DNA of 64,000 nt from IMGVR_UViG_3300035182_002586:464958-528957; one strand, 5' to 3'; positions 4,145 through 60,352 are shown, counted from the stretch's first letter. Notes: generated from the letters alone by a model not told the origin. Numbers and translations: made by a program.

Positions 4145-4160
4145 TTGCTACCTAAGAGCT

Positions 4161-8540: not shown

Positions 8541-8885
8541 ATGAAGAAGTGGACACCGTGGACGCGTGACCTCGCGTTCGACTTCATCGCGAGAGCCATC
8601 CCCGTGATGAAAGACGCCGGGTACGCGTGCGCCCTCGCGGGAAGTCTCCTGATCAAGAACGAGAGTCAGAAGGATCTGGATCTGGATCTCGTTCTCTTCC
8701 CCTACGACAACACCAAGTCACGCGTGGACGATGCTCTCGAAGCCCTCCGGTCCCTCGGGATGGCCTGCGTGTTCGACGTGGCGTTCGTACACGAGAAGTG
8801 GGCGAACCAGGGGAGCACGGATCGAAAGCACGTCGAGGTGTGGGAGTACGACGGCCACCGCATCGATGTCTTCTGGCTGGAGTGA
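8541..8885 (+). CDS. Putative minimal nucleotidyltransferase (Pol-beta superfamily-like)
   Basis: ALAGSLL...KDLDLDL (GS...DxD) plus distal IDVF acidic residue. Confidence 0.55.
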   Translation: MKKWTPWTRDLAFDFIARAIPVMKDAGYACALAGSLLIKNESQKDLDLDLVLFPYDNTKSRVDDALEALRSLGMACVFDVAFVHEKWANQGSTDRKHVEVWEYDGHRIDVFWLE

Positions 8886-9213
8886 ACATGTCGAGTTACG
8901 GCGAACGAGTCCGCACTCTGCTCGAACACGGGACGGTCATCTGCGAGTGCCACACGTGCATGGGGTCGGACGGCACCGCTGTCCTCCGCATCCTGTGGGA
9001 CGATGGACACATCAGCGAGATGCCTTACTACAAGGTCGTCCCGTCGGACAAACCCGGACGCCCGCTCTTCAACGGGCAGCCCGCAACGGACGGCCGAACG
9101 CCGCGAGTACCGCAGCATCCCGTTCAAGCACCTGCACGGGAGGTATGACGCGACGTACCTCCCGGACCCCCTTCCTCGACACACGAGCCCTCTCACCCTT
9201 CCCTGAGGCCACG

Positions 9214-9732
9214 ATGATGCCCCGCAAGAACATGACGATCCGTGGGAACTACGCTCTCTTCTGGGGCCAGTGGCCGTCCAACTGGGAGGCGTCCCCCTTC
9301 ACCATCGACGGCAAGAGCTACACGTGCGTCGAGCAGTGGATGATGGCGGAGAAGGCTCGCCTCTTCGGCGACACCGTGGCGGAGGCCCGCATCATGGCGA
9401 CTGCGGACCCCGCGGATCAGAAGCGCTACGGCCGTGGCGTGAAGGGGTACGTCGAGGACCAGTGGGCGGCTGTCCGCTACCAGATCGTGCTTCGAGGCGT
9501 CGTCGAGAAGTACAGGCAGAACGAGCACTTGCGGGAGAAGCTCCTCGCGACGGGAGACCTCCAGTTCGTCGAGGCGTCCCCCGAAGACCGGGTGTGGGGC
9601 ATCGGCATGCGCGCGACGGATCCCGGTGCCGACAACCCCCGCCAGTGGCGGGGCCAGAACCTCCTCGGCAAGGCCACGACGGAAGCGCGGGAGACCATCC
9701 GCGCGGAGATGGCCCTCGCAGGCATCCCGTGA
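9214..9732 (+). CDS. NADAR (YbiA-like) family ADP-ribosyl/N-glycosidase
   Basis: FWGQWPSNW...EQWMMAEKARLFGD...K.YGR.V...KYRQN...LLATG...VEASPEDRVWGIG...GQNLLG hallmark motifs. Confidence 0.92.
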   Translation: MMPRKNMTIRGNYALFWGQWPSNWEASPFTIDGKSYTCVEQWMMAEKARLFGDTVAEARIMATADPADQKRYGRGVKGYVEDQWAAVRYQIVLRGVVEKYRQNEHLREKLLATGDLQFVEASPEDRVWGIGMRATDPGADNPRQWRGQNLLGKATTEARETIRAEMALAGIP

Positions 9733-11527
9733 GAACCCCGATGACCAAGGACACCCCCAAGCTCACCTACACCAAAGCGCGGGCGAAAGCCGCAGCGCTC
9801 GACGAGAAGCTCCTCGCGACGGACAAGCGACTCGACGGCAGCGTGATCGTCGTGCACCAGGACGGCTCGATCTTCTACTTCAACCGAGCCTTCGTGCTCC
9901 AGTACCAGGACTTCGCCATTATCCTGACGGAGCACCACGGTCCGCACGTCTACGCGACGTACGACCTCAAAGACATGCGCGCCTTGGGCCCGCGCATGTC
10001 CATCAAGAAGACCCGATGACCGAACCCAAGCCCACCGACCTGCACTATTGGGGTTACGCAGGGAAGCCTACGTTCGGGATCCCCTGCGGCGCGCCATCGA
10101 ACAACCACTCCAAGGTCACGGGCTACGCGAACGACGTCACGTGCCCGGGCTGCCGGGCTGCACTAGACGCCTCGTTCGCTTCCACCGTCACCCGACCCCG
10201 ATGAGCATCAAGAACAAGAGCGGCTTCCTGCCCCCTGAGGACGACCTTCCGCCTTACGCGAAGGACACGCCGTGCTGGGGCTGCGGCAACCTCTTCGACT
10301 TCACCGAGCTACTCGCCAAAGACGAAGGACTCTGCACCAAGTGTGCGAAAACCGTAAGGAAGACTGAGGGCTCGACATGACGACTCAGAGCTACAAGCGA
10401 TGCGGCAAATGTGGGGCTCAGTACATCTACACGGGGAGCGGACACGGCTGTCTGAAGCCCCTGAACAACTCGACCTGGTGCCCCGACTGCACGAGAGTCG
10501 TCAACGCGGCCCTCGCGAACATCCCGAGGAAGTTCGAGGGGCGTTGGACCCCCATCGCCGAAGTGCCACACCTCGCGGGCGTCACCCCGGAGCACATTCG
10601 GGCCTGGGAGGAAGCGGCGCACCGTGAAGCTGAAGAGAGGCAGGCCGCAGGGCAGATCGTGGCCCGTCGCGTCTTCTCGCCCCTCTTCAACCTCCAGACC
10701 GGCGACTCTCAGAACGTGCGAGAGGTCCGTGGCCGCGACGAGTTCCAAGGGCACACGTTCAAGGTCGCCTCTTGGCGTCAAGCGGGAGGAATCGAGATCG
10801 AGGTCAACATGGAGTACGACCTCCAGAACAACCGCTACACCGGACACGAATGGCCCCGCGCGGTCCCAAAGCGCGGATCGGTGTACCCCCGAGAGAGCTG
10901 ACATGAAACTCGACATCCCGATCGTCGTCATCCACCGACCGACCCCGGAGTATTCCAACATCCCGGGCCCCCGTCTCGACTGGACTGCTCGAAGCCTACT
11001 GCCCCTTCCGAGCTTCATGATGGGCGACCCCTTCTGGCAACCGGCAGCCGCAGGGGAGACTCGCGAAGAAGCCGTCAAGCACCTCAGGACCACGATCGAA
11101 CGATGGTCCAAGGAACACCGGGCCGAGCTGGCAACCTTCACGGTGGAGACATGATCGTCAACGTCTCCGCCGGCTCCGTCGAGGGTGAGGTCGTCCCCTT
11201 CCCGATGACGAAAGAACAACGGCATGTCGCCTGTGAGAAGCTGGCCGGAGGCCCTTCCCGTCAAACGGCGGAGTACGACGGAGTGCAGCTCTTCCGGGCT
11301 AACAAGCCTGTCCTGACCCTCGACGGACTGCCAGTCCTACCCGAACCCAAGACTCGCAAGTGTCACGCCTGTGGTTCAACCGTGCCGTCCAAACGAGCCC
11401 CGAAGGTGAAGGCCCGTCGCGCACGCAAGCAGAAGTGGTGGCTCTACTACGGACCCAACCGCCTCTCGGGCGGCTTCCCGACGAAGCAAGAGGCGATGAA
11501 CTGGTACCTCAAGGGCGGGAGGTAGCC

Positions 11528-20070: not shown

Positions 20071-21516
20071 GCCACTGGGATACGTGCGAACACTGCCGAG
20101 CGAACTTCCAAGAACCGCCCGGCGTCGTGCACATCTACGGGCAGCATAGCTGGCACGGGGAAGCGTATATCGTCGCGGACGAGAAGGGTCTCACCCTTGT
20201 CCGCGACGCCATCAACCGGGCCCTCGCCGAAGGCCAGGCCCACGTGGGGCTCTCCCCCGCCGATGGGGAGGGCTTCCTCCTCTACGTCGTCAAGCACGAC
20301 ACCGAGCGGATGGACAAGCTCACGCTGCCGTACCCCGAGCACCCGGGGTCGGAGAAGACCCACCGCCCCCCGTACAGCATCGTCAAGGAACCCACGGACG
20401 GGGTAGAGGACGAGATCCTCGGGGACGACGAGTGGTTCGAGTTCATGCGCAGAACGGGGATGATCGAATGAGCACCGAAGACACCAAGGCCCTGATCGCC
20501 CGCCTGCGGGAGCTGCGGGCGAAGACGCCACAGGGCACGTGGATGACGTACTCCGAGGAAGGCCCCTACCAGGGCACGACCCGACAGACGCACTCCGTCT
20601 GCATCTACGACCCGACCTTCAATCACGACGAAGACCACGTGTGCGTCACCACGGGCGTCGGAGACGACGAAGAGCAGGCACGCAACGTCGCGATCTTCAT
20701 CGCCGAAGCCCACACCGCGCTCCCCCGCCTCCTCGACGAGCTGGAAGCGGCACTGGCGGGCAAGTGACGAGGAACAGCTTCGACGTGCTATCCCGTCCCA
20801 TGGGCGGGCTCAAGGTGCTGTTCGCCAAGTGCAGTGATGGGGTCGTCCACGCCTTCGGCCTGAACGGGGACAAGGTGGAGGCCACGCCTGCGTGCAACGC
20901 CGAGGTCGGGAGCAAGCGCGTCCCCGCCACCGATGCTGACCCCGCCTGCGAGAGCTGCGGGGCTGCTGCCGAAGCGTGGGCTCAAGGCGCGCCCCTCCGG
21001 ATGATCCAAACCTGATGGATCGCCCCTAACCACACGAGGTAGAGGGATCATGCCGACTGCCACCGTGTGCGCGAATGACCGTGGGGAACGGTACGTCGAG
21101 GCCGAGTGCAGCGGCTACACCTTCCAGTACAGGTCCGACGAGCTTCCCTCCGAAGGCACGGAGGTCGAGGTCGAGACCTACATGGGCATCGGGGACGTGT
21201 ACTGCGCCGACATCACCTGGACCGACTTCGAGAGCCGCTACCACATCACCGCGACCGGCTGGTGAGCGGCTTCGCGCAGAACGCGCACGCCCCGTCCTTG
21301 ACGTAGCTCCCGTGCCCGTCCAGACGCCCGTTAGGCGTGATGCAGGATACGAGGTCCCACTCCCCACGGGCCACGAGGTTCGCAGCAGCGATCACCGCCG
21401 TCATGCTCCCCTCGGCCACCACCTGGAGTTCCCTCAAAGGCTGGTGTTTGGGCTCCGGCGCGCGGCACAGACTCGCTCGACCACCACCCAAGTCGATCAC
21501 CACGTACGGCTTCATC

Positions 21517-22470
21517 CTAGGACCCCTTCACCCGAAGACGGCGAATCTCCTCGATGAGCACGGGTAGATCGTCGAGAGCTTGATAGGCCGTCGCGATGTC
21601 CGCGTCGTTGTCCAGGGCGAAGCCAGGGACCCGGGCGCTGACTGCCCGCTCCGTGATGGCAGCCAGCGCTTCCTCCGAGAGCGGGACCTCCCTCGCCTTG
21701 AACCGCTCGACCTGGTAGCGACCACGAAGCTCCAGGAGGCACATCACGAGCATCTGGCAGCGAGACCCTGTGTAGTGCTCCAGCTCGTGGATGGCATCGT
21801 CCAGCGTCTCCCACCGCTTGGGGTCCGTGATGGCTTCCGCTAGCGGACGGGGCTCCCCCTCCATCGCTCTCACGATGCGCTGCGTGCGCTCCACGACGGC
21901 CGCTGCACTCGCAGGGTCGACGACCAAGGGGTGACGAATCACCACGGCGTCGAGGTTGGACGCACCCCCTTCGATGTCTTCGTCCCCGCACCCCGCCTCG
22001 CGCGCACGTGCGAGATCTTCCGAATCCGGCTCATAGTCGTCGGTGTCCGGATAGTCGGGGTAGTCGTAGTCGTCCCGGTCGTCCATGGGTCGAGAGTCCC
22101 CCTGACACTCTTCACATGCCGTCGCCTCCCACAGGTGCTTGGAGTAGACGCGACGCCCGGGCTTCCCGCACTGCTCGCACGTCTCGCCGCTCCGGTCGAT
22201 GGCCTCCTTGACGATGGCCTGGACCTCGGGCGTGCCGCCGAAAGGTTCATCGGAGATCCTCGTGGGAACCATGTTGAGGGTGGCGTACTTCTCCTTGATG
22301 TACGTGAACGACGCCCCGAGCTTCTCCGCCTTCGCCCCGAGGTCCATCAGGATGGCTTCCCACCCCTCGTCGTGGGCGAAGTGGCAGTTGCCGTAGACCG
22401 TCGGGTACGCCGCGCGCAACCGCGCCGTCATCGTTGCAAGCTGCTTCGCGGACTCTTCGTGCGTCTTCAT
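21517..22470 (-). CDS. Phage hypothetical protein (EGW...IKEKY...TCEQCGKPG) with C-terminal extension
   Basis: 317-aa ORF; GGTGTA (tacacc) upstream near 22483. Confidence 0.65.
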   Translation of the reverse strand: MKTHEESAKQLATMTARLRAAYPTVYGNCHFAHDEGWEAILMDLGAKAEKLGASFTYIKEKYATLNMVPTRISDEPFGGTPEVQAIVKEAIDRSGETCEQCGKPGRRVYSKHLWEATACEECQGDSRPMDDRDDYDYPDYPDTDDYEPDSEDLARAREAGCGDEDIEGGASNLDAVVIRHPLVVDPASAAAVVERTQRIVRAMEGEPRPLAEAITDPKRWETLDDAIHELEHYTGSRCQMLVMCLLELRGRYQVERFKAREVPLSEEALAAITERAVSARVPGFALDNDADIATAYQALDDLPVLIEEIRRLRVKGS

Positions 22471-26874: not shown

Positions 26875-27540
26875 ATGAACGTGTCTGTTCTTCGCCCCGA
26901 GGTGTCGAAGGTCGCCGTGAAGGTCGCGCTGCAAGGCGTCGCAGCGGAGGGCTTCAAGTACGACGCCCATCTGGTCGATCTCGTGCGCCGGAACACGACC
27001 ATGCGCGGCCGGCAGGTGCAGTTCGGGCTCGACGCTCTCCGCCGTACGACCCGTTGGGCGCAAGTCGCCACGGGGATGAGCACGATCTTCGAGGAGGGGG
27101 TCAGCTCTCAGGACGCGCGTGACCGCTTCGAGGCCATCCGCGAACGCCCGAACTACTACTTCATGGTGACGAACTACCTCGGGCGCCAGGCGACCAAGAA
27201 GGGAACCACCGCCCCGAACGAGAAGCTCCTGACGGCCGAGCAGGCGTGCACGATCCTCGGCCTCAAGTGGGGCATGTGGAAGAAGCGCATGTGGCGGTTC
27301 CACAAGGGGGAGCCCAACACCTACAAGAAGGACGACCGCCGCCGCTTCACCGGTTGGATGCCCACGCCAGTGGAAGGGGCCTACCTCTCCAAGAAGGCGC
27401 TGTTCACGGCCGCCGACATCGCCAGGGTTCAGCGCCTCCATGGAGGTAAGGATCCGACTGTCGAGGTGAAGGTGACGCCGGAGAACGATGTCGAACCCGC
27501 CCCCAAGGCTTGGCCGCGCGCGGCGCGAGGAGGCCGGTGA
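26875..27540 (+). CDS. Hypothetical protein with C-terminal excisionase/MerR-like HTH
   Basis: LLTAEQACTILGLKWGMWKKRM pattern; class I motif at 26812. Confidence 0.5.
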   Translation: MNVSVLRPEVSKVAVKVALQGVAAEGFKYDAHLVDLVRRNTTMRGRQVQFGLDALRRTTRWAQVATGMSTIFEEGVSSQDARDRFEAIRERPNYYFMVTNYLGRQATKKGTTAPNEKLLTAEQACTILGLKWGMWKKRMWRFHKGEPNTYKKDDRRRFTGWMPTPVEGAYLSKKALFTAADIARVQRLHGGKDPTVEVKVTPENDVEPAPKAWPRAARGGR

Positions 27541-28229
27541 TGAAAAGCCCCCGTCCGCGTCTCCACCTGAAGGACGACGACTTCCGCGCCCTTCGCCACA
27601 TGGCCATCGACACGGACCGCACGGTCGGTGACCTGGTGGCCGAAGCGATCCAGCTTCTCTTCAAGCACCACAACTACGTGTGGGGGCAGACGAAACCTGA
27701 GAAAACGACCACACCCGCGAGCTGCGGCTCGACCCCGAAGAAGGGAGTTCGACCGATCGGCCGCCCGCGTCGGGCCCTCAACACCCCTCCGGAAGGGATC
27801 GAAGTCGAGCGCGTCCGACTCGGGTTGTCGAAACGCGAACACGCGAAGAAGATCGGGATCCCGATCGCAACGTACCTGGCCGCAGTGCAACGCGAAAGTG
27901 TAACGCCTGTGGTCACCGAGAAGCCCAACAAGGCTCCGGTCACCGAGAAGCCCAACAAGGCTCCGGTCACCGGAATCTCCCTGGAGACGTTCGCGAAGCG
28001 ACGTGGCGTGCCCGTGTCGCAGATCGTCAAAGAGGGCCCGGACGCGCCGCTCAAGATTCGGTCGAAGACGACGGGACGGTGCCTCACGACGAAGGGTGAG
28101 TGGGCAGACCTTCATCGCAGGACCATCGTGCTGACGACGGCGCAAGAAGCCGAGGAGTTCGTGAAGAGCGTCTTCGGGGAGTTGAGTGGTACGTCGGACG
28201 TGGAGATCGTTCCGGTCTACGCCAACTGA
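27540..28229 (+). CDS. Putative transcriptional regulator: N-terminal RHH plus Xre-like HTH
   Basis: LHLKDDDFRALRHMAIDTDRTVGDLVAEAI (RHH-like); IEVERVRLGLSKREHAKKIGIPIATY (HTH-like). Confidence 0.6.
   Translation: MKSPRPRLHLKDDDFRALRHMAIDTDRTVGDLVAEAIQLLFKHHNYVWGQTKPEKTTTPASCGSTPKKGVRPIGRPRRALNTPPEGIEVERVRLGLSKREHAKKIGIPIATYLAAVQRESVTPVVTEKPNKAPVTEKPNKAPVTGISLETFAKRRGVPVSQIVKEGPDAPLKIRSKTTGRCLTTKGEWADLHRRTIVLTTAQEAEEFVKSVFGELSGTSDVEIVPVYAN
27911..27972 (+). repeat. In-frame 27-nt tandem duplication (VTEKPNKAP x2)
   Basis: ggtcaccgagaagcccaacaaggctcc twice plus an 8-nt partial copy. Confidence 0.95.
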
Positions 28230-35000: not shown

Positions 35001-35849
35001 GGCGCGTGCAACCGACAGTCGCGACGACCGCACCAGCACCCGACCTGGACCTTACGGATCACCCGGACCCTCTTCCTTTTCATCGCGTGACCTCCTCTCC
35101 CACCGACGATCCGCCTCGACCGCCGACCGGTCCCTCACCTTCCGAATGCCCCCGCGAAGACGAAGACACCCCCAAGGGTCACAGAGCGGACAGTACGGCT
35201 CCAACGGCCCCTGCGCGCGCTGCATGCGACGAGTAGCCTTCGACCCAGAACTCTTCTTCTGCTGCATGGTTGTACCTCCGAACCTACGGAGGCACACCAC
35301 CTCGACCTACACTCACTTCTTCCCCCGGTTCGCCAGCATCTCGCCAAGCGTGGCCCCGAACGCCTTCGGCTTCGAGGGGGTGACACGAGCCACCGTCCGC
35401 AAGGCGCCACGTTGCACCGGAGTCCACACAGCCGGCTCCGGAGAAGCCATCCCCCGGACCGCACGCTGACGGAGAAGCTCCTCCTCCGCCTCGAAGATCG
35501 CACGGTCCATCGCCGCGTCCCGAGAGAGACCGCTCTTCTCCTCCAGCTCCAGGGCCCGAGCCGTCATCGCCTCGACGACCTTCGGAGACGACAAGACCCG
35601 GAACTCCTCGTCCGTCAGATCCCGCGTCGGCTTCGGAACCGGCTCCATCTCACCCAACCTCCGCCCGGATGTCCCGGATCCCCACCCGCTTGCGCACACG
35701 CCGCGTCGCCCGCTTGATCGCCTTGCGGGCCTTGCGACGACACCGAACCTTTGATGCGCCGTAAGGGCCCGGTTTGCCACTCGGACCGTCCGGCCAGTTC
35801 GTCCGAGCCAACGCGTCCTTCAACGCCTCGACCTTGCGCTCGAACTTCA

Positions 35850-36227
35850 TCACATGCCCTTGGCGTAGTCCTCGCAGCTCATGAACTCGCAACCGAGAAG
35901 CGTCCCGATCAGCTCCGCCAGAACCACCGCGTCCGCCATCGACGAGTTGAGCTTACGCTCCACGTAGTTCGGCGCCAGGTAGCCACCGTCGCTCGGCACC
36001 ACCATCGAAGGCGCACGGAACCCGTTCACCCACGACACGAGAACCCCCGTCCCCTCCCGACCAAGACCACAGGCCGTGCACGCCTCCGGTCCGAGCCGCC
36101 CCAACTCCGTCAGGACCAGGACGTACCGCGTCCCGTTCCCCGGTTGGTACTCCACGAAGCGCGCCCCCTCGGCCTCGCTCTGCTTCGTGATCCCCTCCGC
36201 CACCGTCGCTTTGGTTCGCAGCTCCAT
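35850..36227 (-). CDS. Hypothetical protein (EYQPGNGTRYVLV) immediately downstream of the CRISPR array
   Basis: 125 aa; own GGTGTA motif (tacacc 36237-36242). Confidence 0.7.
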   Translation of the reverse strand: MELRTKATVAEGITKQSEAEGARFVEYQPGNGTRYVLVLTELGRLGPEACTACGLGREGTGVLVSWVNGFRAPSMVVPSDGGYLAPNYVERKLNSSMADAVVLAELIGTLLGCEFMSCEDYAKGM

Positions 36228-36261
36228 ACCCTCATCTACACCGGGGTCGGGTCATAACTAT

Positions 36262-36881
36262 GTCTCGGCGTACCGAGCAATCTGCGTGCGTTCCTAGTTG
36301 GCCTCGCCCCGTGAGAGGCCGGTGACCACGACGCGTCTCGGCGTACCGAGCAATCTGCGTGCGTTCCTAGGGGTGAGCAGGAGGTTCGACATGCACGACG
36401 ACGACGTGTCTCGGCGTACCGAGCAATCTGCGTGCGTTCCTAGTCACCATCGTCGAGGGGACGGGGTTGGGCTTCACCGTGTCTCGGCGTACCGAGCAAT
36501 CTGCGTGCGTTCCTAGTACTCGCCGAGGTCTTGAGGGTCTGCGTCGAGGGCTTGTCTCGGCGTACCGAGCAATCTGCGTGCGTTCCTAGCCCTCGGCCGT
36601 CGCACGCTTCGCCGTTCGTGTGTACCGTCTCGGCGTACCGAGCAATCTGCGTGCGTTCCTAGTTGCGACGTTCGAGGCCGACCAAGGCTCCGGTATCGTC
36701 TCGGCGTACCGAGCAATCTGCGTGCGTTCCTAGGCGCCTCGAAGCAGATCACGTGATCCCATGGGTCACTCGTGTCTCGGCGTACCGAGCAATCTGCGTG
36801 CGTTCCTAGCGAGAGGGCTCTCCCGAACAGGAAGGACCTTCCTCAGTCTCGGCGTACCGAGCAATCTGCGTGCGTTCCTAG
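36262..36881 (-). CRISPR. CRISPR array: 9 identical 36-nt repeats, 8 spacers (35-40 nt)
   Basis: Plus-strand repeat GTCTCGGCGTACCGAGCAATCTGCGTGCGTTCCTAG at 36262, 36335, 36408, 36481, 36554, 36627, 36698, 36774, 36846. The minus-strand form CTAGGAACGCACGCAGATTG-CTCGG-TACG-CCGAG-AC has the ATTGC-stem-loop-GAC 3' end typical of CasPhi repeats. Confidence 0.99.
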
Positions 36882-36888
36882 GGACCGC

Positions 36889-39279
36889 CTAAATGCTGAG
36901 TGTGTCTGAGGGGTTGTACACCGGATTGCGAGAGGCGTCACCAGGAGACTTGTCCACCCCGTCGTCAGACGAGCCCTCCTGGACAGACGGCTCCGTTTTC
37001 TGCTTAGGTTTCAGAGGCTTGCGAGCCTTGCGAGCGGTCCCCGCCTTTTGAACGTCACCCGACCGCTCGCGAACCGGGGGCTTCGGCATGGCCTTACCGG
37101 TCAGAGCAACACGCTCAATGTTGTCCGTCGCGACCTCCAGGTCCGCGTGAAGCGTCGCCCCACACTGGAGGCAAACGAACTTCTCCCCATTGCGGTTACC
37201 CTTGTCACAGTGGCCGCACCGCGGGCACGTCATGCTCGTCCGCTGCGGAGTGACTTCGATGACGTACGACCCACGGTGAAGGCCGAGGTCTGAGAACGCC
37301 TTGTGGAGCGCTTGGATGACCCAGCGATTCTCTTTCTTCGCCGTGAAGAAAGCGTCCCAGCCCCGATCCCGCTTCCCCTTGCCGTGGAAGAAGCCGACGT
37401 TCAGGTCCTCGATGACGAACACCACACGCTCGCACTGCGTGTACCTCTTCGCCTCACGCTCGATGAAATTGACGCACCGACGAGCCAGCTCCAACTTCTG
37501 CTTCGCCAGCTTCGCGAAGGTCGGGTGGGCCCGCTTGAGGTCGAGCACGGCCTTGTTCAGAGCATCGCGCGTGTCCTTCGTAAGCCGGGGCCGCACACCC
37601 TCCATGCGAGAGATGCGCAGGTCGCGGAACTTGAGGGTCTCGCCCTCCTTGTTCTTGAAGTAGACGAGAGACTCGTCACCCCCCTTGCGGAGCACCGCGT
37701 CCACGATGAACGTGCTGTGCCCGGTCATCTCTCCCCACGGCACGTCCTGCGGACTGATCGAGTACTTTTCGCAGACGCGACGACGAGCGACTTCCACGCT
37801 CACGTCACACACACGGGTGATCTCCGCCTGCTGCTCGGGCGTCATCGTCTCGAACGCCTGCGCTCGAATGGCGTCCTCGAAGGCATCCATCCGCTTACGG
37901 TAGCTGGACAGCTCCCCAAGCAGCACGTCGGAGAGGAACATCCGGTGAACCGGCTCCGCAACCAGAGCGCCCTCCTGCGCCCGAACGCGGGAGACCTTCA
38001 TCGAGGCCGGGTTCGTCTGCCCAAGGTCCACCGATACGAGAGCGATCTCTTCCTTGGCCACAAGGCTCTCCAGAAGGGCCCGTGACCTAAACGTCGGGAC
38101 CGTCTTCCGTGAGTGCACGTCGACCTGACCGAGTTTGTACGTGAAGGTGATGAGCCCGCGCTGAACGTCAAAGACAGGGTACTCCGTGAAGAGGCCCAAG
38201 AGCGAATTCAAGCTCAGGCCCTCTTCTGGAGTGAAGCCGCGACGGCGGGCATCACGGAGAAGCCCCCGCACATCGATGATGGCCCAGTCCTCGCCGATCG
38301 AGATGGAGACGAGCAAAGCGTCCTTCGCGCTCGCCTTCTTGAGCGCCTCGGGGTCGTACTTCGAGGTACGGCCCGGCTTCGGCTTGTGACACGCGTTCGA
38401 GTACCACTTGCGCTGACGGCGAGACCCCTCACGCAGCGGGAACTTGTTCCTCTCCGGATCCCGCTGCCACTCGGGCACGTAACCACGCTCACCCTTCGGG
38501 ATGCTCAGCCTACCCTCCGGTAGACTCTCTACCAGAACCGCGTCAGGATCCCGCCGGTAGCCCGCGAAATCCACAGACATGCCAGAAAAGCCCTGAAGAT
38601 CCGTACACACACGCGGGGCCACCCCCTGGTAGCCGTAGATCGAAGGGTTCACCCCCGGAGGCTGGAGCAGACGACCCTCATCGTCCGTCGCGGACTCCAC
38701 CGTTACAGGAACTTCCGGGAGACCCTCCTCGACCCGACGCCGGTTCGCCCCCTCCTGACGCTTGAGGCTCTTCTTGTTCCGGTTCTCGACCTTCTTCAGA
38801 ACGCCCTTGAAACGGTTCACCGTGTTCTGAAAGATCGTATTCAGACCTTGAACCTGACGGTACCCGTAGTTCTCCACCCCCGTCTTCGCGAACCACTCCG
38901 CGTGACTCGGCTTGGATGTCCCCGGCGAGAACACGTCCAACTCCGCCACCGTGAGCCCGTAGACGTACTTCTGAATGGCCTCGGAGGCGCGAACGATCGG
39001 CCACTCCGAGAACGGGCGGCTCTGCGCCACGATCGTGCCCTTGGCCGGAGGTTTGAAGTTCGGAGGGTAGTCGCTCACCTTGTTGCGAAGGTATTCGACG
39101 CACGCCTCCTCACCCTCATGCTTGAGCTTCTTCCCCGCAGTCTTCTGATGGTCCTTCCGGAAACGGCCAGCCGGGAAGTGGGTCTTGATCACGTCGGAAA
39201 GCTTGAGGGTCGCGCTAGGAGCTGCCGCACCGCATTCACAATTCGTGGGCGCTACATCTGAGAGCGTGGGTCCAGGCAT
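36889..39279 (-). CDS. cas12j: CasPhi / Cas12j type V CRISPR effector nuclease
   Basis: 796 aa; RuvC-I VSVDLGQTNP, RuvC-II VIEDLNV, Zn ribbon CPRCGHC...CLQCG, RuvC-III HADLEVATDNI; CasPhi-like segments (HFPxxRF, PNFxPPAK, SRPFSEWPI, LLQPPGVNP, DVRGLLR, GWDxFFTAKKENRW); abuts the array. Confidence 0.97.
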   Translation of the reverse strand: MPGPTLSDVAPTNCECGAAAPSATLKLSDVIKTHFPAGRFRKDHQKTAGKKLKHEGEEACVEYLRNKVSDYPPNFKPPAKGTIVAQSRPFSEWPIVRASEAIQKYVYGLTVAELDVFSPGTSKPSHAEWFAKTGVENYGYRQVQGLNTIFQNTVNRFKGVLKKVENRNKKSLKRQEGANRRRVEEGLPEVPVTVESATDDEGRLLQPPGVNPSIYGYQGVAPRVCTDLQGFSGMSVDFAGYRRDPDAVLVESLPEGRLSIPKGERGYVPEWQRDPERNKFPLREGSRRQRKWYSNACHKPKPGRTSKYDPEALKKASAKDALLVSISIGEDWAIIDVRGLLRDARRRGFTPEEGLSLNSLLGLFTEYPVFDVQRGLITFTYKLGQVDVHSRKTVPTFRSRALLESLVAKEEIALVSVDLGQTNPASMKVSRVRAQEGALVAEPVHRMFLSDVLLGELSSYRKRMDAFEDAIRAQAFETMTPEQQAEITRVCDVSVEVARRRVCEKYSISPQDVPWGEMTGHSTFIVDAVLRKGGDESLVYFKNKEGETLKFRDLRISRMEGVRPRLTKDTRDALNKAVLDLKRAHPTFAKLAKQKLELARRCVNFIEREAKRYTQCERVVFVIEDLNVGFFHGKGKRDRGWDAFFTAKKENRWVIQALHKAFSDLGLHRGSYVIEVTPQRTSMTCPRCGHCDKGNRNGEKFVCLQCGATLHADLEVATDNIERVALTGKAMPKPPVRERSGDVQKAGTARKARKPLKPKQKTEPSVQEGSSDDGVDKSPGDASRNPVYNPSDTLSI

Positions 39280-39290
39280 GGCGGCGCCCG

Positions 39291-39296
39291 TACACC
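39291..39296 (-). promoter_or_regulatory. Class II motif GGTGTA upstream of cas12j (representative of many copies)
   Basis: 11 nt upstream of the cas ATG; the same hexamer lies about 8-15 nt before many starts (plus: 8160, 12158, 19135, about 23979, about 32637, about 52139, 60382, about 60708; minus as tacacc: 557, 8147, 34015, 36237, 41100, about 41946, about 44814, about 58085, 60367, about 62611). Confidence 0.65.
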
Positions 39297-39341
39297 AGAT
39301 CGCTCGCCATCAGATCGACTCTCGGTACGCACCCAACGCGC

Positions 39342-39920
39342 TCACAGCACGTGGTGGAAGCTGACCGTGATCTGAGCGATCTCTCGACGGTCGAGATGCG
39401 TCACGACCGGGGCGTTCATCCGAGCCCATTCCCGACTCTCGTATATCTTCGCGATCTGCGCCAACTGGTCCTGACGCTCCCGGCTCGGCACCACACGGCG
39501 GATGTCGTCCCACTCCCCCCGGAAGATACGAACCGGGTCCAGACGGTAAGGCACCTCCTTGTGCCGATGGTCCATTCCCACCAGCCCGGCGCCTTCCGGG
39601 ACCGGACGCAGGAGATGCCCTCCCCACTCGCTCCCGTCCGCCTTGTACACGTGGATCTCCATCGGATGGTAGATGTCCGGGGTCCGGCTGATCTCCTCCA
39701 CACCCTTCCAGAACCGCTCGACCAGATCGTCCAGCTCCGGACACGGACCGTGCTCCCGCGGGTTCAGATAGTTGCCCGTCTGCCGCTCCGTGAACTTCAC
39801 CGGCAAGACCAGGAACCCGAGCCCGTGCCGGACCCGCGCCCGCGGAACCTCCCGGGAAGTAGGGGCCGGAGCCGCAGGAAGAGCCGCCAGAGCCTTCAAG
39901 AACGATCGACGCTCAGTCAT
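39342..39920 (-). CDS. Hypothetical protein with twin-arginine-like N-terminus (MTERRSFLKALAAL)
   Basis: 192-aa ORF directly upstream of cas12j. Confidence 0.65.
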   Translation of the reverse strand: MTERRSFLKALAALPAAPAPTSREVPRARVRHGLGFLVLPVKFTERQTGNYLNPREHGPCPELDDLVERFWKGVEEISRTPDIYHPMEIHVYKADGSEWGGHLLRPVPEGAGLVGMDHRHKEVPYRLDPVRIFRGEWDDIRRVVPSRERQDQLAQIAKIYESREWARMNAPVVTHLDRREIAQITVSFHHVL

Positions 39921-40100: not shown

Positions 40101-41087
40101 CTAGGGGCTGAACACCTCGTCTCCCTCCATAGGCAACCCATCGAACATCCTCAGGAAAGGGTCGACAACCTCTACCACGGGAACAGGTTTGAGCGCTTCT
40201 GCTTGGATGTAGTCCAGAAGCTCGGGATCAGGTCGGAACCACTCTCCGCGCAAACGCAGATGCTCGAACCTGAGATGCAGGTCTGCCTCGCTGTCCTTCG
40301 TGCCCAAGGTAGTCAGTAGGACCACCACCCGATCCGGAAGGGCGGTCTTCAAGGCTCGGAGACGGTAAAGAGGGCGCTGTGTAAAGCCGATCTTGACAGG
40401 TCGATCTGGAGACCCTGCCTGAACGAAGTACACACGCTGGATGTTGTCACCCCAGGACCAGAAGCGATCCTCGTCCCGTCGCAGTGCAAGGATCTCTCGC
40501 ACTTGTTCGACGTTGGGGCCCGTATAGAGGGGGTCGTAATCCTCGTCCACTTTGTGCTTCGCACGTCGGTGGTAGTCGAGGTCGTCCGGAAGCAAATCGC
40601 AGTCGGGGCAGCTACCTCGTTTGCGCACACCCTCACGAAGTAGCTGCTTGCGTGCACCAGCAGCCGCACGGCCTCCGCCCAAAGACGATGCTCGAAAGCG
40701 CTGAACTATCGCGTGTGGGAACTCAGCCAAGTACTCCGCTGCGGACAGTCCGTGCTTCTCTTGAAGATGCTTCTCTAACTGGTCTCTGCGGAGACACCCG
40801 CACTTTAGACACACGGCCACGTCCAGACCTACGACTAGGGCCTTGCCCGCTTTGAAGACCCGGTGCTCGGCCTGGAGGTGCGCTACGAGGCTGGAAACCG
40901 TCTCGAAGGTCTCGGCGCAGACCGGGCAAGTCGTCACTGCCTGCACAAGGGCCGGATGCTGCGGGTCTCGTTTTTCAGCACAATCTGAACAGATCGTACG
41001 AGCAGATCCGAAGAGGTCTTGGTCCCGATGGCGGTGGCACCCAGGGCAGAACCGGCCGCTTACGGCACCCTTGTGTAGAGGTCTCAC
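40101..41087 (-). CDS. Zinc-finger plus T5orf172/MUG113 (GIY-YIG-like) protein
   Basis: VYFVQA...VKIGFT...RL..L...E..LH.RF..LRLRGEWF; N-terminal C2H2-like (CPVC...HLQAEH) and MucR-like (C..C...HLQEKHGLS..EY) fingers. Confidence 0.85.
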   Translation of the reverse strand: MRPLHKGAVSGRFCPGCHRHRDQDLFGSARTICSDCAEKRDPQHPALVQAVTTCPVCAETFETVSSLVAHLQAEHRVFKAGKALVVGLDVAVCLKCGCLRRDQLEKHLQEKHGLSAAEYLAEFPHAIVQRFRASSLGGGRAAAGARKQLLREGVRKRGSCPDCDLLPDDLDYHRRAKHKVDEDYDPLYTGPNVEQVREILALRRDEDRFWSWGDNIQRVYFVQAGSPDRPVKIGFTQRPLYRLRALKTALPDRVVVLLTTLGTKDSEADLHLRFEHLRLRGEWFRPDPELLDYIQAEALKPVPVVEVVDPFLRMFDGLPMEGDEVFSP

Positions 41088-42265: not shown

Positions 42266-43174
42266 TTACCCATTTTGATGGTCCGTAGCTGCGGGTACGG
42301 GTCTATCCAGTTCACGCGAACGATCGGCAGCCTTGAAGGTCGGGGACAGGTACAGGGACTCGACCGTGTTCTCGCTCCGGCCGCTTAGGGTTGCCTGCGA
42401 CGACACCCCCGCGTGGACCTCAAGATGATGAAGACCGAGGTGCTTCGGCAGGGGCTCTCCGTAGGCTTTTTCGCCGCATCGTCCGTCGAACGAAACGATG
42501 TACGAAATGCCTCGGGCGTTGAGGGACGCGAGGGCTTCTACGAAGCGCCCCCGGTCAAGCTGGTCCCGATACCGTCGGTCCCGACCTTCGCTGGTCCCCT
42601 GGTAGGGCGGGTCCATGTAGACGAGATCGTGAGGTCCGGCCCGGAGCAACAACTGCTCGTAGTCACCCGCCATGACCTCCGTTCGACCGGCCAGAAGTGA
42701 GGCGGCTCCCATCACCTCTTGTCTGAGCTTCTCTGGCCGCATACCGAGGCGTCGGTTGTCGGGCGACTGGTTGAACTCGCCCCTCGGGTTGAACCTCACG
42801 GCGTTCTTCACGCAGCGGGCCAGCAAGTACAGCAGCTTGACGGGATCGCCATCTCGGTTGAAGTCCGCTCGGACCTCATCGTAGAACTCCCGCTGGCGGC
42901 CCTGCTGGTCGTTCCAGAGCGACTCGTAGCCATCGGCAACCTTCCCCGGACTGTTGAGAATGCTGGTCCAGAGGCTCGCCAGGGGCGCGAGAGAGTCACC
43001 CAGCAGGTAGCGACGGCCGAGTTGTTCCTGGGCGGCAGCCAGCGTCACGGCCGCCGACCCCGCGAACGGTTCGATGAGCGTCTCCACCCGCTTGGGGAAG
43101 AGGTCGAGGATCTTCCCCGCGAGGTTTCGCTTGCTTCCCTGGTACGGGATCGGATGGGGAACCTTGCTCATCAC
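42266..43174 (-). CDS. Dam-like (D12-class) N6-adenine DNA methyltransferase
   Basis: PYQGSKR, EPFAGSAA (motif I), DLVYMDPPY (motif IV), RFN..G.FN. Confidence 0.92.
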   Translation of the reverse strand: MMSKVPHPIPYQGSKRNLAGKILDLFPKRVETLIEPFAGSAAVTLAAAQEQLGRRYLLGDSLAPLASLWTSILNSPGKVADGYESLWNDQQGRQREFYDEVRADFNRDGDPVKLLYLLARCVKNAVRFNPRGEFNQSPDNRRLGMRPEKLRQEVMGAASLLAGRTEVMAGDYEQLLLRAGPHDLVYMDPPYQGTSEGRDRRYRDQLDRGRFVEALASLNARGISYIVSFDGRCGEKAYGEPLPKHLGLHHLEVHAGVSSQATLSGRSENTVESLYLSPTFKAADRSRELDRPVPAATDHQNG

Positions 43175-47006: not shown

Positions 47007-47234
47007 TCATGGGTTATCCAGGGCCGCGAGAGCCCTTGCAGTGGCCTCGTCCATCCACTCCGCGTCGCACCGCGTGCAGGTTGGGATGCAGAGCGTCTCG
47101 GGGATCGCCATCCGGCCGCCCCCTTTGGCGCGCCGGGTCCGGCCGCCCCCTTTGGCGCGCCGGGTCCGGCCGGGCTTCGCCGTGGGCACGACCCGGGCGC
47201 CGCAGTCGGGGCACGTGTCGGGGGCGACGATCAC
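47007..47234 (-). CDS. Small Zn-finger protein (YgiT/MqsA-type zinc ribbon-like) with internal 9-aa duplication
   Basis: CPDCG...IPTCTRCDAEW; RTRRAKGGG x2. Confidence 0.55.
   Translation of the reverse strand: MIVAPDTCPDCGARVVPTAKPGRTRRAKGGGRTRRAKGGGRMAIPETLCIPTCTRCDAEWMDEATARALAALDNP
47111..47172. repeat. In-frame 27-nt tandem duplication
   Basis: tccggccgccccctttggcgcgccggg twice plus 8-nt partial tccggccg. Confidence 0.95.
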
Positions 47235-58922: not shown

Positions 58923-59215
58923 GTCCCTCCTACAGCGCGGGCCGGGTCGAGATCCATCCACGACCGGACGCTTCCGGGGCCGGCGTACGGGCGGGTGCGA
59001 TAACGCAATGCGTCGGGGATCGTGTCCGTCGGGACCGGATCCCCGACCGGAAAATCGACAGGGGCGGACCGGCTGGATTTCCGGGCTGGCATGGTCATTG
59101 ACCGTGCCATTACCGTTCGTGGCCGGATCCGCCAACGGTCGTGATCGGGTTTGGCACTTGGTGATCCATACCCCATATAAGCGACGCGTGCGTCATCGGG
59201 AACCCCCTAGCCCCG

Positions 59216-59370
59216 GATCAGGTCCGATCAGGTCCGATCAGGTCAGGTCCGATCAGGTCAGGTCAGGTCCGATCAGGTCCGATCAGGTCAGGTCCGATCA
59301 GGTCCGATCAGGTCAGGTCCGATCAGGTCCGGTCAGGTCCGGTCAGGTCCGGTCAGGTCCGGTCAGGTCG
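59216..59370. repeat. Array of 31 in-register pentamers (GATCA/GGTCC/GGTCA) with 9 GATC sites
   Basis: Read directly; non-coding, lies between the 58551-58922 gene/promoter and the stop of 59465-60352. Confidence 0.97.
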
Positions 59371-59464: not shown

Positions 59465-60352
59465 TCACCCTTCGGTGAGTGTCTTGGCCGTCTCCAGTCC
59501 TTTCGGGGTGGGCTGCCAGAAGCGCTTACCGCCAAGGGAGCGTTTGGAGACGAGGCCCGCCTTGGTGAGGTCATAGAGGGCGTTGAAGGCGACCGTGTAG
59601 TCGACGCCTAGAGAGCGAGCGACCCAAGCGCACCGGACGGGTGCTTGAGCGGCCACGAGGACTTTGAGGACGGTCTCTGAGCGTCGGAGGGGGACGTCTT
59701 TGGGGAGGTAGTTGCGCGGCTGTTCTAAACCCACGACGAAGTGTCCGAGGGCGATGGGCCAGCCGGGCCAGTGGTTTCCGTAGAAGCGGCGGGGGTTGCC
59801 GGGTGCCCGTGAGTCGAGGAGTCCGGTGTCGTACCTTTCGAACCAGTCATCTTGGTCACGGATGCCGATGTCTCGGGCGTACTGTGTGCACTGGTTGAGG
59901 GTGAACTTCCCGATGGGTTCGATGGGTTCGGGAGCTTCTTCGGGGGGTGGTTTCACGAAGCCAGCTCGGGCATCTGCGATCCACTGCAACAGGTCGGGCC
60001 CCATGGTGAACCACTCGCCTCCGACCCTGAGGTGTTTGAACCGGGCGTGGATGGCGTGTTCTTGGTCAGACTGTGGGAGTACGAGGAGAAGGAAGACGGG
60101 GTAGGGGGTGTTGGTTCGGACCGTGCTCATCCGTGACCGAACGTCTTTAGCGACGCCGATCTTGATGCGATCGAGACAGAGGATGGCGTAGACACCTGGA
60201 GTGACGGGCGGGAGGAGCGGTGGGAGGTCGAATCCCTTCTCGATGAGGATGTCTCGTCCGTCCCGCACCCCGGAGATGGACGGGGGGTGTGGGAGGGGGG
60301 CGAGTGTCTGAACGTAGGGGCGTTTCCGTCGAGCGAGGGCGCGGGCCTGCAT
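59465..60352 (-). CDS. T5orf172/GIY-YIG-like + integrase-repeat-like unit + winged-HTH protein
   Basis: GVYAI...IKIGVAKDVRSRM...EHAIHARF..LRVGGEWF; ARDIGIRDQDDW...PGNP..FY...WPGW..ALG; C-terminal VARSLGV...LY.L.KAGLV. Confidence 0.8.
   Translation of the reverse strand: MQARALARRKRPYVQTLAPLPHPPSISGVRDGRDILIEKGFDLPPLLPPVTPGVYAILCLDRIKIGVAKDVRSRMSTVRTNTPYPVFLLLVLPQSDQEHAIHARFKHLRVGGEWFTMGPDLLQWIADARAGFVKPPPEEAPEPIEPIGKFTLNQCTQYARDIGIRDQDDWFERYDTGLLDSRAPGNPRRFYGNHWPGWPIALGHFVVGLEQPRNYLPKDVPLRRSETVLKVLVAAQAPVRCAWVARSLGVDYTVAFNALYDLTKAGLVSKRSLGGKRFWQPTPKGLETAKTLTEG

What the first reader, a model, noticed from the sequence alone, without database searches (positions are those of the whole stretch)
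36262..39296. Phage-encoded minimal CRISPR-CasPhi (Cas12j) system: single RuvC effector plus 8-spacer array, no adaptation genes
Seen: a 796-aa ORF with intact RuvC-I/II/III acidic residues (DLG, EDL, ADL) and a Zn ribbon ends 7 nt from nine identical 36-nt repeats. The repeats' co-oriented strand ends in ATTG-CTCGG-TACG-CCGAG-AC. No cas1/2/4 is recognisable in 64 kb of phage-like genes. Established: CasPhi/Cas12j are compact, tracrRNA-independent, self-processing type V effectors of huge phages. Inference: this is an active inter-phage/MGE competition system. Spacers are GC-rich and several read as open codon-like sequence. The family is described, so novelty would lie in this ortholog (long Lys/Ser-rich C-terminal tail, PAM, repeat) and its targets.
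Basis: partly seen in the sequence, partly recalled or inferred. Interest (0 to 1): 0.9.

Follow-up and report, generated by a model that had tools for sequence, protein, structure and literature searches.

The report
Known phage CasΦ (Cas12j-11) CRISPR locus
This is a real, intact miniature CRISPR system (a CasΦ/Cas12j nuclease plus an 8-spacer array) on a 620-kb huge-phage contig. The same protein and repeat were already published in 2025 as "Cas12j-11", so the finding is correct but not new.

Summary
A 796-aa ORF lies at 36889-39279 on the minus strand. Seven nt after its stop come nine identical 36-nt repeats and eight spacers (36262-36881).

The protein matches solved CasΦ-2, Cas12j-SF05 and CasΦ-3 structures over its full length (E = 6e-210 to 7e-162). 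It keeps the RuvC residues D418/E624/D713 and a CxxC…CxxC zinc ribbon. The repeat ends in the family's crRNA handle, GAUUGC-hairpin-AC.

No Cas1/2/4, tracrRNA-like anti-repeat or tRNA was found in the 64 kb. The contig (620,031 bp) is listed in IMG/VR as a virus.

A 2025 bioRxiv preprint lists this exact protein, contig and repeat as Cas12j-11 and reports dsDNA cleavage in vitro next to a TTG PAM.

No protospacer was found for any spacer, so "inter-phage competition" remains an inference.

One unexpected side observation: the 20-nt handle also occurs as solitary, strand-specific copies in other huge phages. These sit in 5'UTRs, in tRNA clusters and next to casΦ genes. None occurs elsewhere in this phage.

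The parts
36889..39279 (-). casΦ / cas12j gene (796 aa from the ATG; identical to published Cas12j-11)
   Evidence: PDB phmmer: CasΦ-2 7lys 6e-210, Cas12j-SF05 8iew 9e-208, CasΦ-3 7odf 7e-162, all full length. N-terminus, RuvC-I motif, C-terminus and contig name found in the preprint supplement.
39190..39192 (-). Alternative GTG start (V30) used by the public gene call (767 aa)
   Evidence: Homologues align from about residue 21, which favours the ATG at 39277-39279.
38026..38028 (-). RuvC-I catalytic Asp (D418, VDLGQT)
   Evidence: Aligns with D394 of CasΦ-2. Invariant column. Codon checked.
37408..37410 (-). RuvC-II catalytic Glu (E624, IEDLNV)
   Evidence: Aligns with E606 of CasΦ-2. Invariant. 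Codon checked.
37162..37227 (-). Zinc ribbon / TNB insert (C685, C688, C703, C706)
   Evidence: Pfam PF07282 at residues 669-715, 1.6e-10. All four Cys invariant. Codons checked.
37141..37143 (-). RuvC-III catalytic Asp (D713, HADLEV)
   Evidence: Aligns with D695 of CasΦ-2. Invariant. Codon checked.
36882..36888 (-). 7-nt gap between the casΦ stop codon and the first repeat; no separate leader
   Evidence: No sigma-70-like promoter in 35700-39800. Co-transcription with casΦ, or a promoter inside its 3' end, is inferred.
36262..36881 (-). CRISPR array: 9 identical 36-nt repeats and 8 spacers, transcribed in the same direction as casΦ. S1 (36810-36845) is next to casΦ and S8 (36298-36334) is distal.
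   Evidence: The repeat in crRNA sense is identical to the Cas12j-11 crRNA repeat in Supplementary Table S4 of the preprint.
36846..36865 (-). One example of the 20-nt crRNA handle AUUG-CUCGG-UACG-CCGAG-AC (the 3' end of every repeat, next to the spacer)
   Evidence: MFE hairpin -7 kcal/mol. The stem is kept by compensatory changes in four independent CasΦ arrays. Same architecture as the published Cas12j1/2/3 handles.

Best explanation
This is a type V-J (CasΦ/Cas12j) CRISPR-Cas locus of a huge phage. It is identical to the published Cas12j-11.

Proposed mechanism:
- The array is transcribed on the minus strand, downstream of casΦ. It is probably co-transcribed, because only 7 nt separate the stop codon from the first repeat.
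- CasΦ binds the 3' hairpin handle of each repeat (GAUUGC-CUCGG-UACG-CCGAG-AC) and cuts the pre-crRNA itself with its single RuvC site. No tracrRNA is involved.
- The result is a crRNA of about 25 nt of handle plus about 18-20 nt of spacer.
- The ribonucleoprotein finds double-stranded DNA with a T-rich 5' PAM (TTN) next to a match and cuts both strands with the same RuvC site.
- In the phage, this most likely destroys competing phages or other mobile DNA during co-infection.
- New spacers, if any are still acquired, must come through host Cas1-Cas2, because the phage region carries none.

What is shown: the gene and array anatomy, family membership, intact catalytic residues, the handle structure, and (by others) in vitro DNA cleavage next to TTG.

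What is inferred: self-processing by this ortholog, co-transcription, the in vivo role and the targets.
For: - Full-length matches to solved CasΦ-2, Cas12j-SF05 and CasΦ-3 structures.
- 24 homologues at 37-48% identity, many on 200-570-kb contigs.
- D418/E624/D713 and four zinc-binding Cys are invariant in the family.
- Nine identical repeats 7 nt after the stop codon.
- The handle matches the published Cas12j1/2/3 handle architecture. Its stem covaries across four independent arrays, with 100% pairing.
- No anti-repeat above shuffled controls within 5 kb on either side.
- No Cas1/2/4.
- The contig is 620,031 bp and is in IMG/VR.
- The preprint lists the same protein, contig and repeat as Cas12j-11. 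All eight new orthologues cleaved linear and circular dsDNA next to a 5'-TTG PAM.
- Huge-phage CRISPR loci usually lack adaptation genes, and some of their spacers target other phages (PMC7162821).
Against: - No protospacer was found, so neither the target class nor the natural PAM is known. The searches were: full-length exact search of all 8 spacers in IMG/VR, BLAST of the array against INPHARED phages, and BLAST against PLSDB.
- The only lead is the first 23 nt of S7, which match acetyl-CoA synthetase genes. This match is partial (26-29 of 37) and lacks a T-rich flank.
- No promoter-like site was found.
- All repeats are identical, so the array gives no polarity or turnover signal.
- No sister array with other spacers was found.
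- In the preprint, Cas12j-11 gave no detectable editing in human cells. This says little about its activity in bacteria.
Confidence: 0.9

Rival explanations
1. The system is real, but its main use is not killing rival DNA. Instead, CasΦ acts on RNA that carries its handle. It would process or regulate phage transcripts, or it would be titrated by handle-bearing transcripts of other phages acting as RNA anti-CRISPR decoys.
For: - The exact 20-nt handle occurs as solitary copies in 6 IMG/VR contexts and about 24 metagenome contexts.
- The copies are strand-specific. 11 of 32 lie within 60 nt upstream of an SD plus start codon, against 0 of 32 on the opposite strand and 10% at random positions.
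- Every copy seen in a tRNA cluster is on the tRNA strand.
- The 20-mer is conserved at a syntenic site before Gp80-type head-fibre genes in three phages whose proteins are only 44-55% identical.
- Solitary or handle-only copies lie beside casΦ in five related loci, and their stems match the same genome's own array.
- Solitary repeat units acting as RNA anti-CRISPRs are established for other CRISPR types (PMC10651486).
Against: - This phage has no solitary copy in the window.
- It has no exact copy elsewhere in the 529-kb IMG/VR record.
- It keeps an ordinary 8-spacer array and an intact DNase site.
- No experiment links CasΦ to these sites.
- The variant copies were found by a scan that required base pairing, so their covariation is partly circular.
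Confidence: 0.3
2. The spacers are aimed at the bacterial host, for gene silencing or host takeover, rather than at rival phages.
For: - The first 23 nt of S7 match the antisense strand of acetyl/acyl-CoA synthetase genes (motif FDMHDDDV) in Variovorax (six genome contigs plus a megaplasmid), Aquimonas, Desulfovibrio and Pseudofrankia.
- Host-targeting spacers are reported for huge phages.
- Spacer GC (0.60-0.73) is close to the phage GC of 0.65.
Against: - Only 26-29 of 37 positions match.
- The 5' flank is AAC or ACG, not T-rich.
- The BLAST E-value is 0.05. By my estimate, about two chance 23-mer hits are expected for 8 spacers in 596 Gb.
- The other seven spacers have no hit.
Confidence: 0.07
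3. The element is not a phage but a megaplasmid or a chromosomal island carrying a CasΦ-like gene.
For: - IMG/VR keeps only 528,957 of the 620,031 bp, so about 90.6 kb at one end was trimmed (coordinates).
- The window has almost no PHROG hits and no structural genes.
- The window has no tRNA.
Against: - The contig is listed as a viral genome in IMG/VR.
- Genes are short, dense and mostly orphan, with no housekeeping or plasmid replication/transfer families among about 40 proteins scanned.
- All close homologues sit on similar huge contigs.
- CasΦ is so far described only from huge phages.
Confidence: 0.05
4. The gene is a TnpB/IS605-type transposon nuclease next to a chance repeat.
For: Profile libraries without a CasΦ model report only TnpB/Cas12f-like hits, confined to the C-terminal 130 residues.
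Against: - Those hits are far below the family cut-offs (35 bits against a cut-off of 100).
- The full-length match is to CasΦ structures.
- There are nine perfect repeats with the CasΦ handle.
- There is no TnpA and there are no transposon ends.
Confidence: 0.01

Closest known systems
Cas12j-11 (Kazlak et al., bioRxiv 10.1101/2025.09.16.676532)
   Same: It is the same protein. The N-terminus, RuvC-I motif and C-terminus all match, it is 796 aa, and the source contig is the same (IMGVR_UViG_3300035182_002586). The 36-nt repeat is also the same (CUAGGAACGCACGCAGAUUGCUCGGUACGCCGAGAC). It was purified and shown to cut dsDNA next to TTG in vitro.
   Different: Nothing differs in sequence. The preprint does not discuss the native spacers, their targets, the phage genome context or the solitary handle copies.
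CasΦ-2 / Cas12j2 (PDB 7LYS, 7LYT, 7M5O)
   Same: Full-length homologue (E = 6e-210). It has the same RuvC triad positions (D394/E606/D695), zinc ribbon and basic C-terminal tail. The crRNA handle architecture is the same: GAUUGC, a 5-bp stem, a tetraloop, then AC.
   Different: Roughly half of the residues differ. The handle stem is CCCCU/AGGGG rather than CUCGG/CCGAG. This protein may have a 17-aa N-terminal extension. The CasΦ-2 handle gave no hit in the IMG/VR subset.
Cas12j-SF05 (PDB 8IEW; P0004)
   Same: 47-49% identical over 93% of the length. Its array handle uses the same stem, CUCGG/CCGAG.
   Different: The handle starts CUUGC and mostly has a UUCG loop. The array has about 35 repeats. 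Its phage carries two solitary copies of the exact Cas12j-11-type 20-mer in 5'UTRs near casΦ, whereas the window has none.
TnpB / Cas12f (type V-F, IS605 OrfB)
   Same: Shares the C-terminal RuvC-II/III region with the zinc-ribbon (TNB) insert.
   Different: There is no similarity outside the last 130 residues or so. CasΦ works as a monomer without tracrRNA or ωRNA (established knowledge), and no anti-repeat was found here.
Solitary repeat units / RNA anti-CRISPRs (Racr; PMC10651486) and crRNA-like cas regulators
   Same: The side observation (solitary CasΦ handles in intergenic, promoter-proximal positions of viral genomes, some directly before a gene) resembles these units. One example is RacrIC1, encoded in one bicistronic RNA with AcrIC5.
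   Different: Here only the 20-nt handle is kept, not the whole repeat. Copies also lie inside tRNA clusters, are conserved at syntenic sites, and co-occur with casΦ in the same genomes with matching stems. That points to use by the phage's own CasΦ at least as much as to decoys. Nothing has been tested.

Membership tests
CasΦ / Cas12j (type V-J) | Full-length sequence homology to CasΦ-1/2/3, not only to the RuvC C-terminus | tested here: met
   phmmer against PDB: residues 21-768 match CasΦ-2 residues 4-745 (E = 6e-210). Cas12j-SF05 gives 9e-208 and CasΦ-3 gives 7e-162.
CasΦ / Cas12j (type V-J) | Single RuvC active site (D, E, D) with a zinc-ribbon insert; size about 700-800 aa | tested here: met
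   D418, E624 and D713 align with D394, E606 and D695 of CasΦ-2. They are invariant in 23 homologues, as are the four Cys. Codons checked. Length is 796 aa.
CasΦ / Cas12j (type V-J) | Adjacent CRISPR array of 36-nt repeats whose 3' end forms the handle GAUUGC-stem-tetraloop-stem-AC | tested here: met
   Nine repeats lie 7 nt from the stop codon. Hairpin predicted. Same architecture as the published Cas12j1/2/3 handles. Compensatory stem changes across the arrays of L015, L016, L017 and the window.
CasΦ / Cas12j (type V-J) | No tracrRNA | tested here: met
   No anti-repeat-like match above shuffled controls within 5 kb on either side. This is absence of evidence only. The preprint's crRNA is the repeat alone.
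CasΦ / Cas12j (type V-J) | No adaptation module (Cas1, Cas2, Cas4) in the locus | tested here: met
   No such family among all 30 window ORFs of 187 aa or more, the neighbours, or the precomputed Pfam calls within 10 kb. ORFs under 187 aa outside the 20-kb neighbourhood were not scanned.
CasΦ / Cas12j (type V-J) | Encoded by a huge phage | tested here: met
   The contig is 620,031 bp and is listed in IMG/VR as UViG_3300035182_002586. Homologues lie on 200-570-kb contigs. No virion genes lie in the window itself.
CasΦ / Cas12j (type V-J) | crRNA-guided dsDNA cleavage next to a T-rich 5' PAM | not testable with these tools
   Reported by others: all eight new orthologues, including Cas12j-11, cut linear and circular dsDNA next to 5'-TTG (preprint section 6). 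No natural protospacer was found, so the natural PAM is unknown.
CasΦ / Cas12j (type V-J) | Self-processing of pre-crRNA by the RuvC site | not testable with these tools
   Established for CasΦ-1/2 (Pausch et al. 2020, from knowledge of the field; restated for the family in the preprint's discussion). Not shown for this ortholog. The preprint supplied a 36-nt repeat.
TnpB / IS605 OrfB | Score above the family cut-off over the whole TnpB profile; transposon context (TnpA, element ends) | tested here: not met
   NF040570 scores 35 bits against a cut-off of 100, and only profile positions 251-380 match. No TnpA in the neighbourhood.
RNA anti-CRISPR (Racr) / solitary repeat unit (applies to the side observation, not to the window) | A solitary repeat-like unit in a virus, not next to an array, that is expressed as RNA and binds the Cas protein | tested here: inconclusive
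   The solitary and strand-specific properties are met in other phages. Expression and CasΦ binding are untested. Several copies lie in genomes that carry their own casΦ, which does not fit a pure decoy.

The most novel reading that the evidence does not exclude
The 20-nt crRNA handle of this array (AUUGCUCGGUACGCCGAGAC), together with covarying versions of it, may be a dispersed cis-element of huge-phage genomes. It is found in 5'UTRs of structural and other genes, inside tRNA clusters and beside casΦ.

If so, CasΦ would have a second, RNA-level job. It could cut or bind handle-tagged phage transcripts to process or regulate them. It could make hard-wired guides without any adaptation machinery. 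Or, in phages that lack casΦ, these copies could be RNA decoys that soak up a rival's CasΦ, including Cas12j-11, whose handle they match 20 of 20.
Probability: 0.35. Interest if true: 0.75.

Novelty: already known. Interest (0 to 1): 0.3.

Why it matters
The locus itself adds little. CasΦ has been a described family since 2020. This exact enzyme and repeat are already in a 2025 preprint with in vitro activity data. What the window adds is the native context: eight natural spacers, the absence of adaptation genes, and the position at the end of a 620-kb phage contig. No targets were identified.

The part that could matter is the side observation. The handle that CasΦ recognises is scattered as conserved, strand-specific solitary copies through huge-phage genomes, including genomes that encode CasΦ. 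If CasΦ acts on these sites, a phage CRISPR nuclease would also be an RNA-processing or regulatory factor, or the target of RNA decoys. That is directly testable with enzymes already in hand (Cas12j-11, Cas12j-SF05).

Tried and rejected
- **Spacer targets.**
  - BLAST of the whole array against INPHARED phages found nothing.
  - BLAST against PLSDB gave one 25-nt hit.
  - Four IMG/VR scans used two-spacers-in-one IUPAC patterns (49-52 bits each). They found only the array itself, so there is no perfect protospacer and no self-target in the 529-kb record.
  - No spacer matches any fetched locus, and no sequence downstream of a solitary handle matches the window.
- **S7 lead.** A genome scan placed its 23-mer in acetyl/acyl-CoA synthetase genes of nine genomes. 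Identity is only 26-29 of 37 and there is no T-rich flank. I rejected it as a bona fide target.
- **Sister arrays.** Neither the IMG/VR nor the metagenome scan with the handle returned any other array with this handle.
- **Promoter or leader.** No consensus promoter was found.
- **tracrRNA.** No anti-repeat was found.
- **Rfam.** No known family covers the handle; only tRNAs were found.
- **PHROGs.** Ten large window proteins gave almost nothing.
- **Viperin reading of the radical-SAM protein.** NCBIfam shows only generic radical-SAM hits, all below cut-off.
- **CasΦ in the solitary-handle loci.** None within the few kb fetched. The whole contigs could not be read.
- **CasΦ-2 handle in IMG/VR.** Zero hits. 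The generality of solitary copies therefore rests on the loci.
- **Conserved neighbours.** There are no conserved genes between the window and other CasΦ loci.
Full report
**1.

- The window has a 796-aa ORF on the minus strand at 36889-39279.
- Seven nt past its stop codon, nine 100%-identical 36-nt repeats begin. They span 36262-36881 and separate eight spacers of 35-40 nt.
- The 20-nt 3' part of the repeat occurs nine times, against 0.01 expected in shuffles.
A CxxC…CxxC zinc ribbon (C685, C688, C703, C706) sits between RuvC-II and RuvC-III.

**2. What the protein is**

- Profile libraries without a CasΦ model see only the C-terminal TNB/RuvC part, far below the cut-offs for TnpB, Cas12f or Cas12e.
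- Against solved structures the match covers the full length and is very strong: CasΦ-2 (7LYS) E = 6e-210 over residues 21-768, Cas12j-SF05 (8IEW) 9e-208, and CasΦ-3 (7ODF) 7e-162.
- In that alignment D418, E624 and D713 fall on D394, E606 and D695 of CasΦ-2.
- A search of 5.8 billion proteins found 24 homologues at 37-48% identity and none closer. Many lie on contigs of 200-570 kb.
- The three acidic residues and four cysteines are invariant among these homologues.
- In a tree the protein sits on its own long branch.
- The basic Lys/Ser/Pro-rich tail is shared with CasΦ-2 and SF05, so it is not a special feature.
- A public gene call starts at V30 (767 aa). Homologues align from about residue 21, which favours the ATG.

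**3. The array**

- In the strand co-oriented with the gene, the repeat reads CTAGGAACGCACGCAGATTGCTCGGTACGCCGAGAC. Its last 20 nt fold into a 5-bp stem with a UACG loop, flanked by AUUG and AC.
- Published crRNA handles have the same layout. Cas12j1 is …GAUUGCUCGAUUAGUCGAGAC, Cas12j2 is …GAUUGCCCCUCACGAGGGGAC, and Cas12j3 is …GAUUGCCCAGUACGCUGGGAC (PMC11600238 supplement).
- Arrays next to three IMG/VR homologues (L015, L016, L017) keep the stem through compensatory changes: CTCCT/AGGAG, CGCTC/GAGCG and CTCGA/TCGAG.
- Orientation and handle are therefore settled. The crRNA is repeat handle at the 5' end and spacer at the 3' end, on the same strand as casΦ.
- No anti-repeat was found within 5 kb, and no sigma-70-like promoter.
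- With only 7 nt between stop codon and first repeat, the array is probably read through from casΦ or from a promoter inside its 3' end. This is an inference.
- In the long array of the SF05 phage (L057), degenerate repeats and an older loop variant lie at the casΦ-distal end. By analogy, S1 next to casΦ would be the newest spacer here.

**4. Context**

- The gene lies on JGI contig Ga0373636_0000001 (620,031 bp, metagenome 3300035182).
- IMG/VR lists 528,957 bp of that contig as UViG_3300035182_002586.
- From the coordinates, the window is the last 64 kb of the contig. IMG/VR trimmed about 90.6 kb from the other end.
- GC is even at about 0.65. There are no tRNAs.
- Genes are short and mostly orphan. 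The few family hits are:
  - a generic radical-SAM protein (4098-5171);
  - a NADAR protein (8731-9732);
  - a Dam-type methyltransferase (42266-43174);
  - two T5orf172/MUG113 proteins (40101-40946, 59465-60352);
  - an RHH protein (27510-28229).
- No Cas1, Cas2 or Cas4 family was hit in any ORF of 187 aa or more, in the ORFs beside the locus, or in the precomputed annotation within 10 kb.
- This fits what is known of huge-phage CRISPR loci (PMC7162821).
- No gene next to casΦ is shared with the other CasΦ loci, so casΦ plus its array behaves as a self-contained module.

**5. Already published**

- A 2025 preprint (bioRxiv 10.1101/2025.09.16.676532) mined IMG/VR v4.1. It named eight new orthologues, Cas12j-11 to -18, of 718-796 aa with 36-bp repeats.
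- Its supplement lists Cas12j-11 with source IMGVR_UViG_3300035182_002586. The N-terminus, RuvC-I motif and C-terminus are those of this ORF.
- Its Table S4 gives the Cas12j-11 crRNA repeat as CUAGGAACGCACGCAGAUUGCUCGGUACGCCGAGAC, exactly this repeat.
- All eight proteins cut linear and circular dsDNA next to a 5'-TTG PAM in vitro.
- Cas12j-11 gave no detectable editing in human cells.

**6. Targets**

- BLAST of the array against 50,697 phage records found nothing.
- Four IMG/VR scans with degenerate patterns, each encoding two full-length spacers, returned only the array itself. There are no perfect protospacers and no self-targets in the 529-kb record.
- PLSDB gave one 25-nt hit (E = 0.05): the first 23 nt of S7 in a Variovorax megaplasmid.
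  - A scan of 185,579 species genomes found the same 23-mer in nine genomes.
  - It always lies antisense in the FDMHDDDV motif of acetyl/acyl-CoA synthetases.
  - Identity over the whole spacer is only 26-29 of 37, and the 5' flank is AAC or ACG.
  - I treat this as a chance or very remote match.
- "Inter-phage competition" thus remains the best inference from the family's biology. It is not shown here.

**7. Side observation: solitary handles in other phages**

- *Where they occur.* The exact 20-nt handle occurs as solitary copies in six sequence contexts on other IMG/VR contigs of 12-407 kb, and in about 24 contexts in metagenome contigs. GC ranges from 0.36 to 0.66. Less than one chance hit is expected in IMG/VR and about two in the metagenomes (my estimate).
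- *What is conserved.* Nothing outside the 20-mer is conserved. Nearby copies carry compensatory stems: CTCAG/CTGAG, CCCGG/CCGGG, CCCAC/GTGGG and a G·U variant. That scan required pairing, so this covariation is partly circular.
- *Strand and position.*
  - 11 of 32 lie within 60 nt upstream of an SD plus start codon on their own strand. The figure is 0 of 32 on the other strand and 10% at random positions.
  - Others lie inside clusters of 12-27 tRNA genes, always on the tRNA strand.
  - Rfam has no family for the motif.
- *Synteny.* In three phages whose orthologous proteins are 44-55% identical (L007, L020, L028), the same 20-mer sits before the orthologous Gp80-type head-fibre gene. The surrounding intergenic DNA cannot be aligned.
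- *Next to casΦ in relatives.* Solitary or handle-only copies also lie beside casΦ in related loci, with stems that match each genome's own array:
  - five handle-only units upstream of casΦ in L016;
  - two exact copies in 5'UTRs in the Cas12j-SF05 phage (L057);
  - several copies in L058 and L059;
  - two copies flanking an array-less casΦ in L060.
- *In this phage.* The window's own phage has none in the window. It also has no exact copy elsewhere in its IMG/VR record.
- *Literature.* I found no paper in the searchable library describing this. Solitary repeat units acting as RNA anti-CRISPRs are known for other types (PMC10651486).
- *Possible roles.* These sites could be CasΦ processing or regulatory sites, hard-wired guides, or decoys. 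Which one applies is open. The match between each genome's solitary stems and its own array favours use by the phage's own CasΦ.

**8. Verdict**

The finding is real and correctly interpreted. It is an intact type V-J CasΦ locus on a huge-phage contig. It is already described as Cas12j-11, and its natural targets remain unknown. Interest in the locus itself is low. The solitary-handle pattern seen in related phages is the lead worth following.

Noticed in passing
L002, L003, L005-L012 (IMG/VR) and L018-L046 (metagenomes); not in the window: The exact 20-nt crRNA handle of this array (ATTGCTCGGTACGCCGAGAC) occurs as solitary, strand-specific copies in about 30 distinct contexts of other phage contigs with GC 0.36-0.66. 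They lie mostly 1-60 nt upstream of start codons or inside tRNA clusters. Nearby variant copies have compensatory stems. Nothing outside the 20-mer is conserved.
   Followed up: partly
L007:1640-1659, L020 (minus strand, motif at 12902 of the reverse complement), L028:9333-9352: The same 20-mer lies at a syntenic site in the 5'UTR of orthologous Gp80-type head-fibre genes (PF23140, phrog_240) in three phages. Their proteins are only 44-55% identical, and the flanking intergenic DNA does not align.
   Followed up: partly
L016:3620-3858; L057:7462 and 16412; L058:6032, 6072, about 9859-9915 (minus strand), 13476, 14365; L059:8163, 13276; L060:12240 and about 9832 (minus strand): Related CasΦ loci carry handle-only mini-arrays or solitary handles right beside casΦ, some on the opposite strand. 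Their stems match the same genome's own array. L060 has casΦ flanked by two solitary handles and no array within 10 kb.
   Followed up: partly
window 36371-36407 (spacer S7); L013, L047-L055: The first 23 nt of S7 are identical to the antisense strand of the FDMHDDDV motif of acetyl/acyl-CoA synthetase genes in Variovorax, Aquimonas, Desulfovibrio and Pseudofrankia. The rest of the spacer does not match and the flank is not T-rich. This is probably chance.
   Followed up: yes
window 4098-5171, 8731-9732, 27510-28229, 40101-40946, 42266-43174, 59465-60352: These are the few recognisable genes among about 100 orphan ORFs. They are a generic radical-SAM protein (weak viperin-like hits below cut-off), a NADAR-domain protein, an RHH/HTH protein, two T5orf172/MUG113 (GIY-YIG-like) proteins and a Dam-family adenine methyltransferase.
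   Followed up: partly
window 59213-59369; also 5995-6082, 27911-27972, 47111-47172: Short tandem repeats. The largest has about 16 copies of a 10-nt unit (CCGGTCAGGT, or a 25-nt period). The others have 2-4 perfect copies of 15- or 27-nt units. They were not examined.
   Followed up: no
whole window (contig Ga0373636_0000001, about 555,579-619,578 of 620,031): The window is the last 64 kb of the contig. The IMG/VR record is the same contig minus about 90.6 kb at the far end, so a virus-prediction tool judged that end less virus-like. The reason is unknown.
   Followed up: no
L057:12326-14708: The Cas12j-SF05 phage array has about 35 repeats. The casΦ-proximal repeats have a TTCG loop. The distal ones have the TACG loop and degenerate 5' parts. 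This polarity places the newest spacers next to casΦ.
   Followed up: no
L058:18196-18660 and 20903-22063: A TnpB/IS605 OrfB gene and a TnpB fragment lie 6-9 kb downstream of casΦ in a 464-kb relative. The ancestor-type and derived nucleases therefore coexist in one phage region.
   Followed up: no
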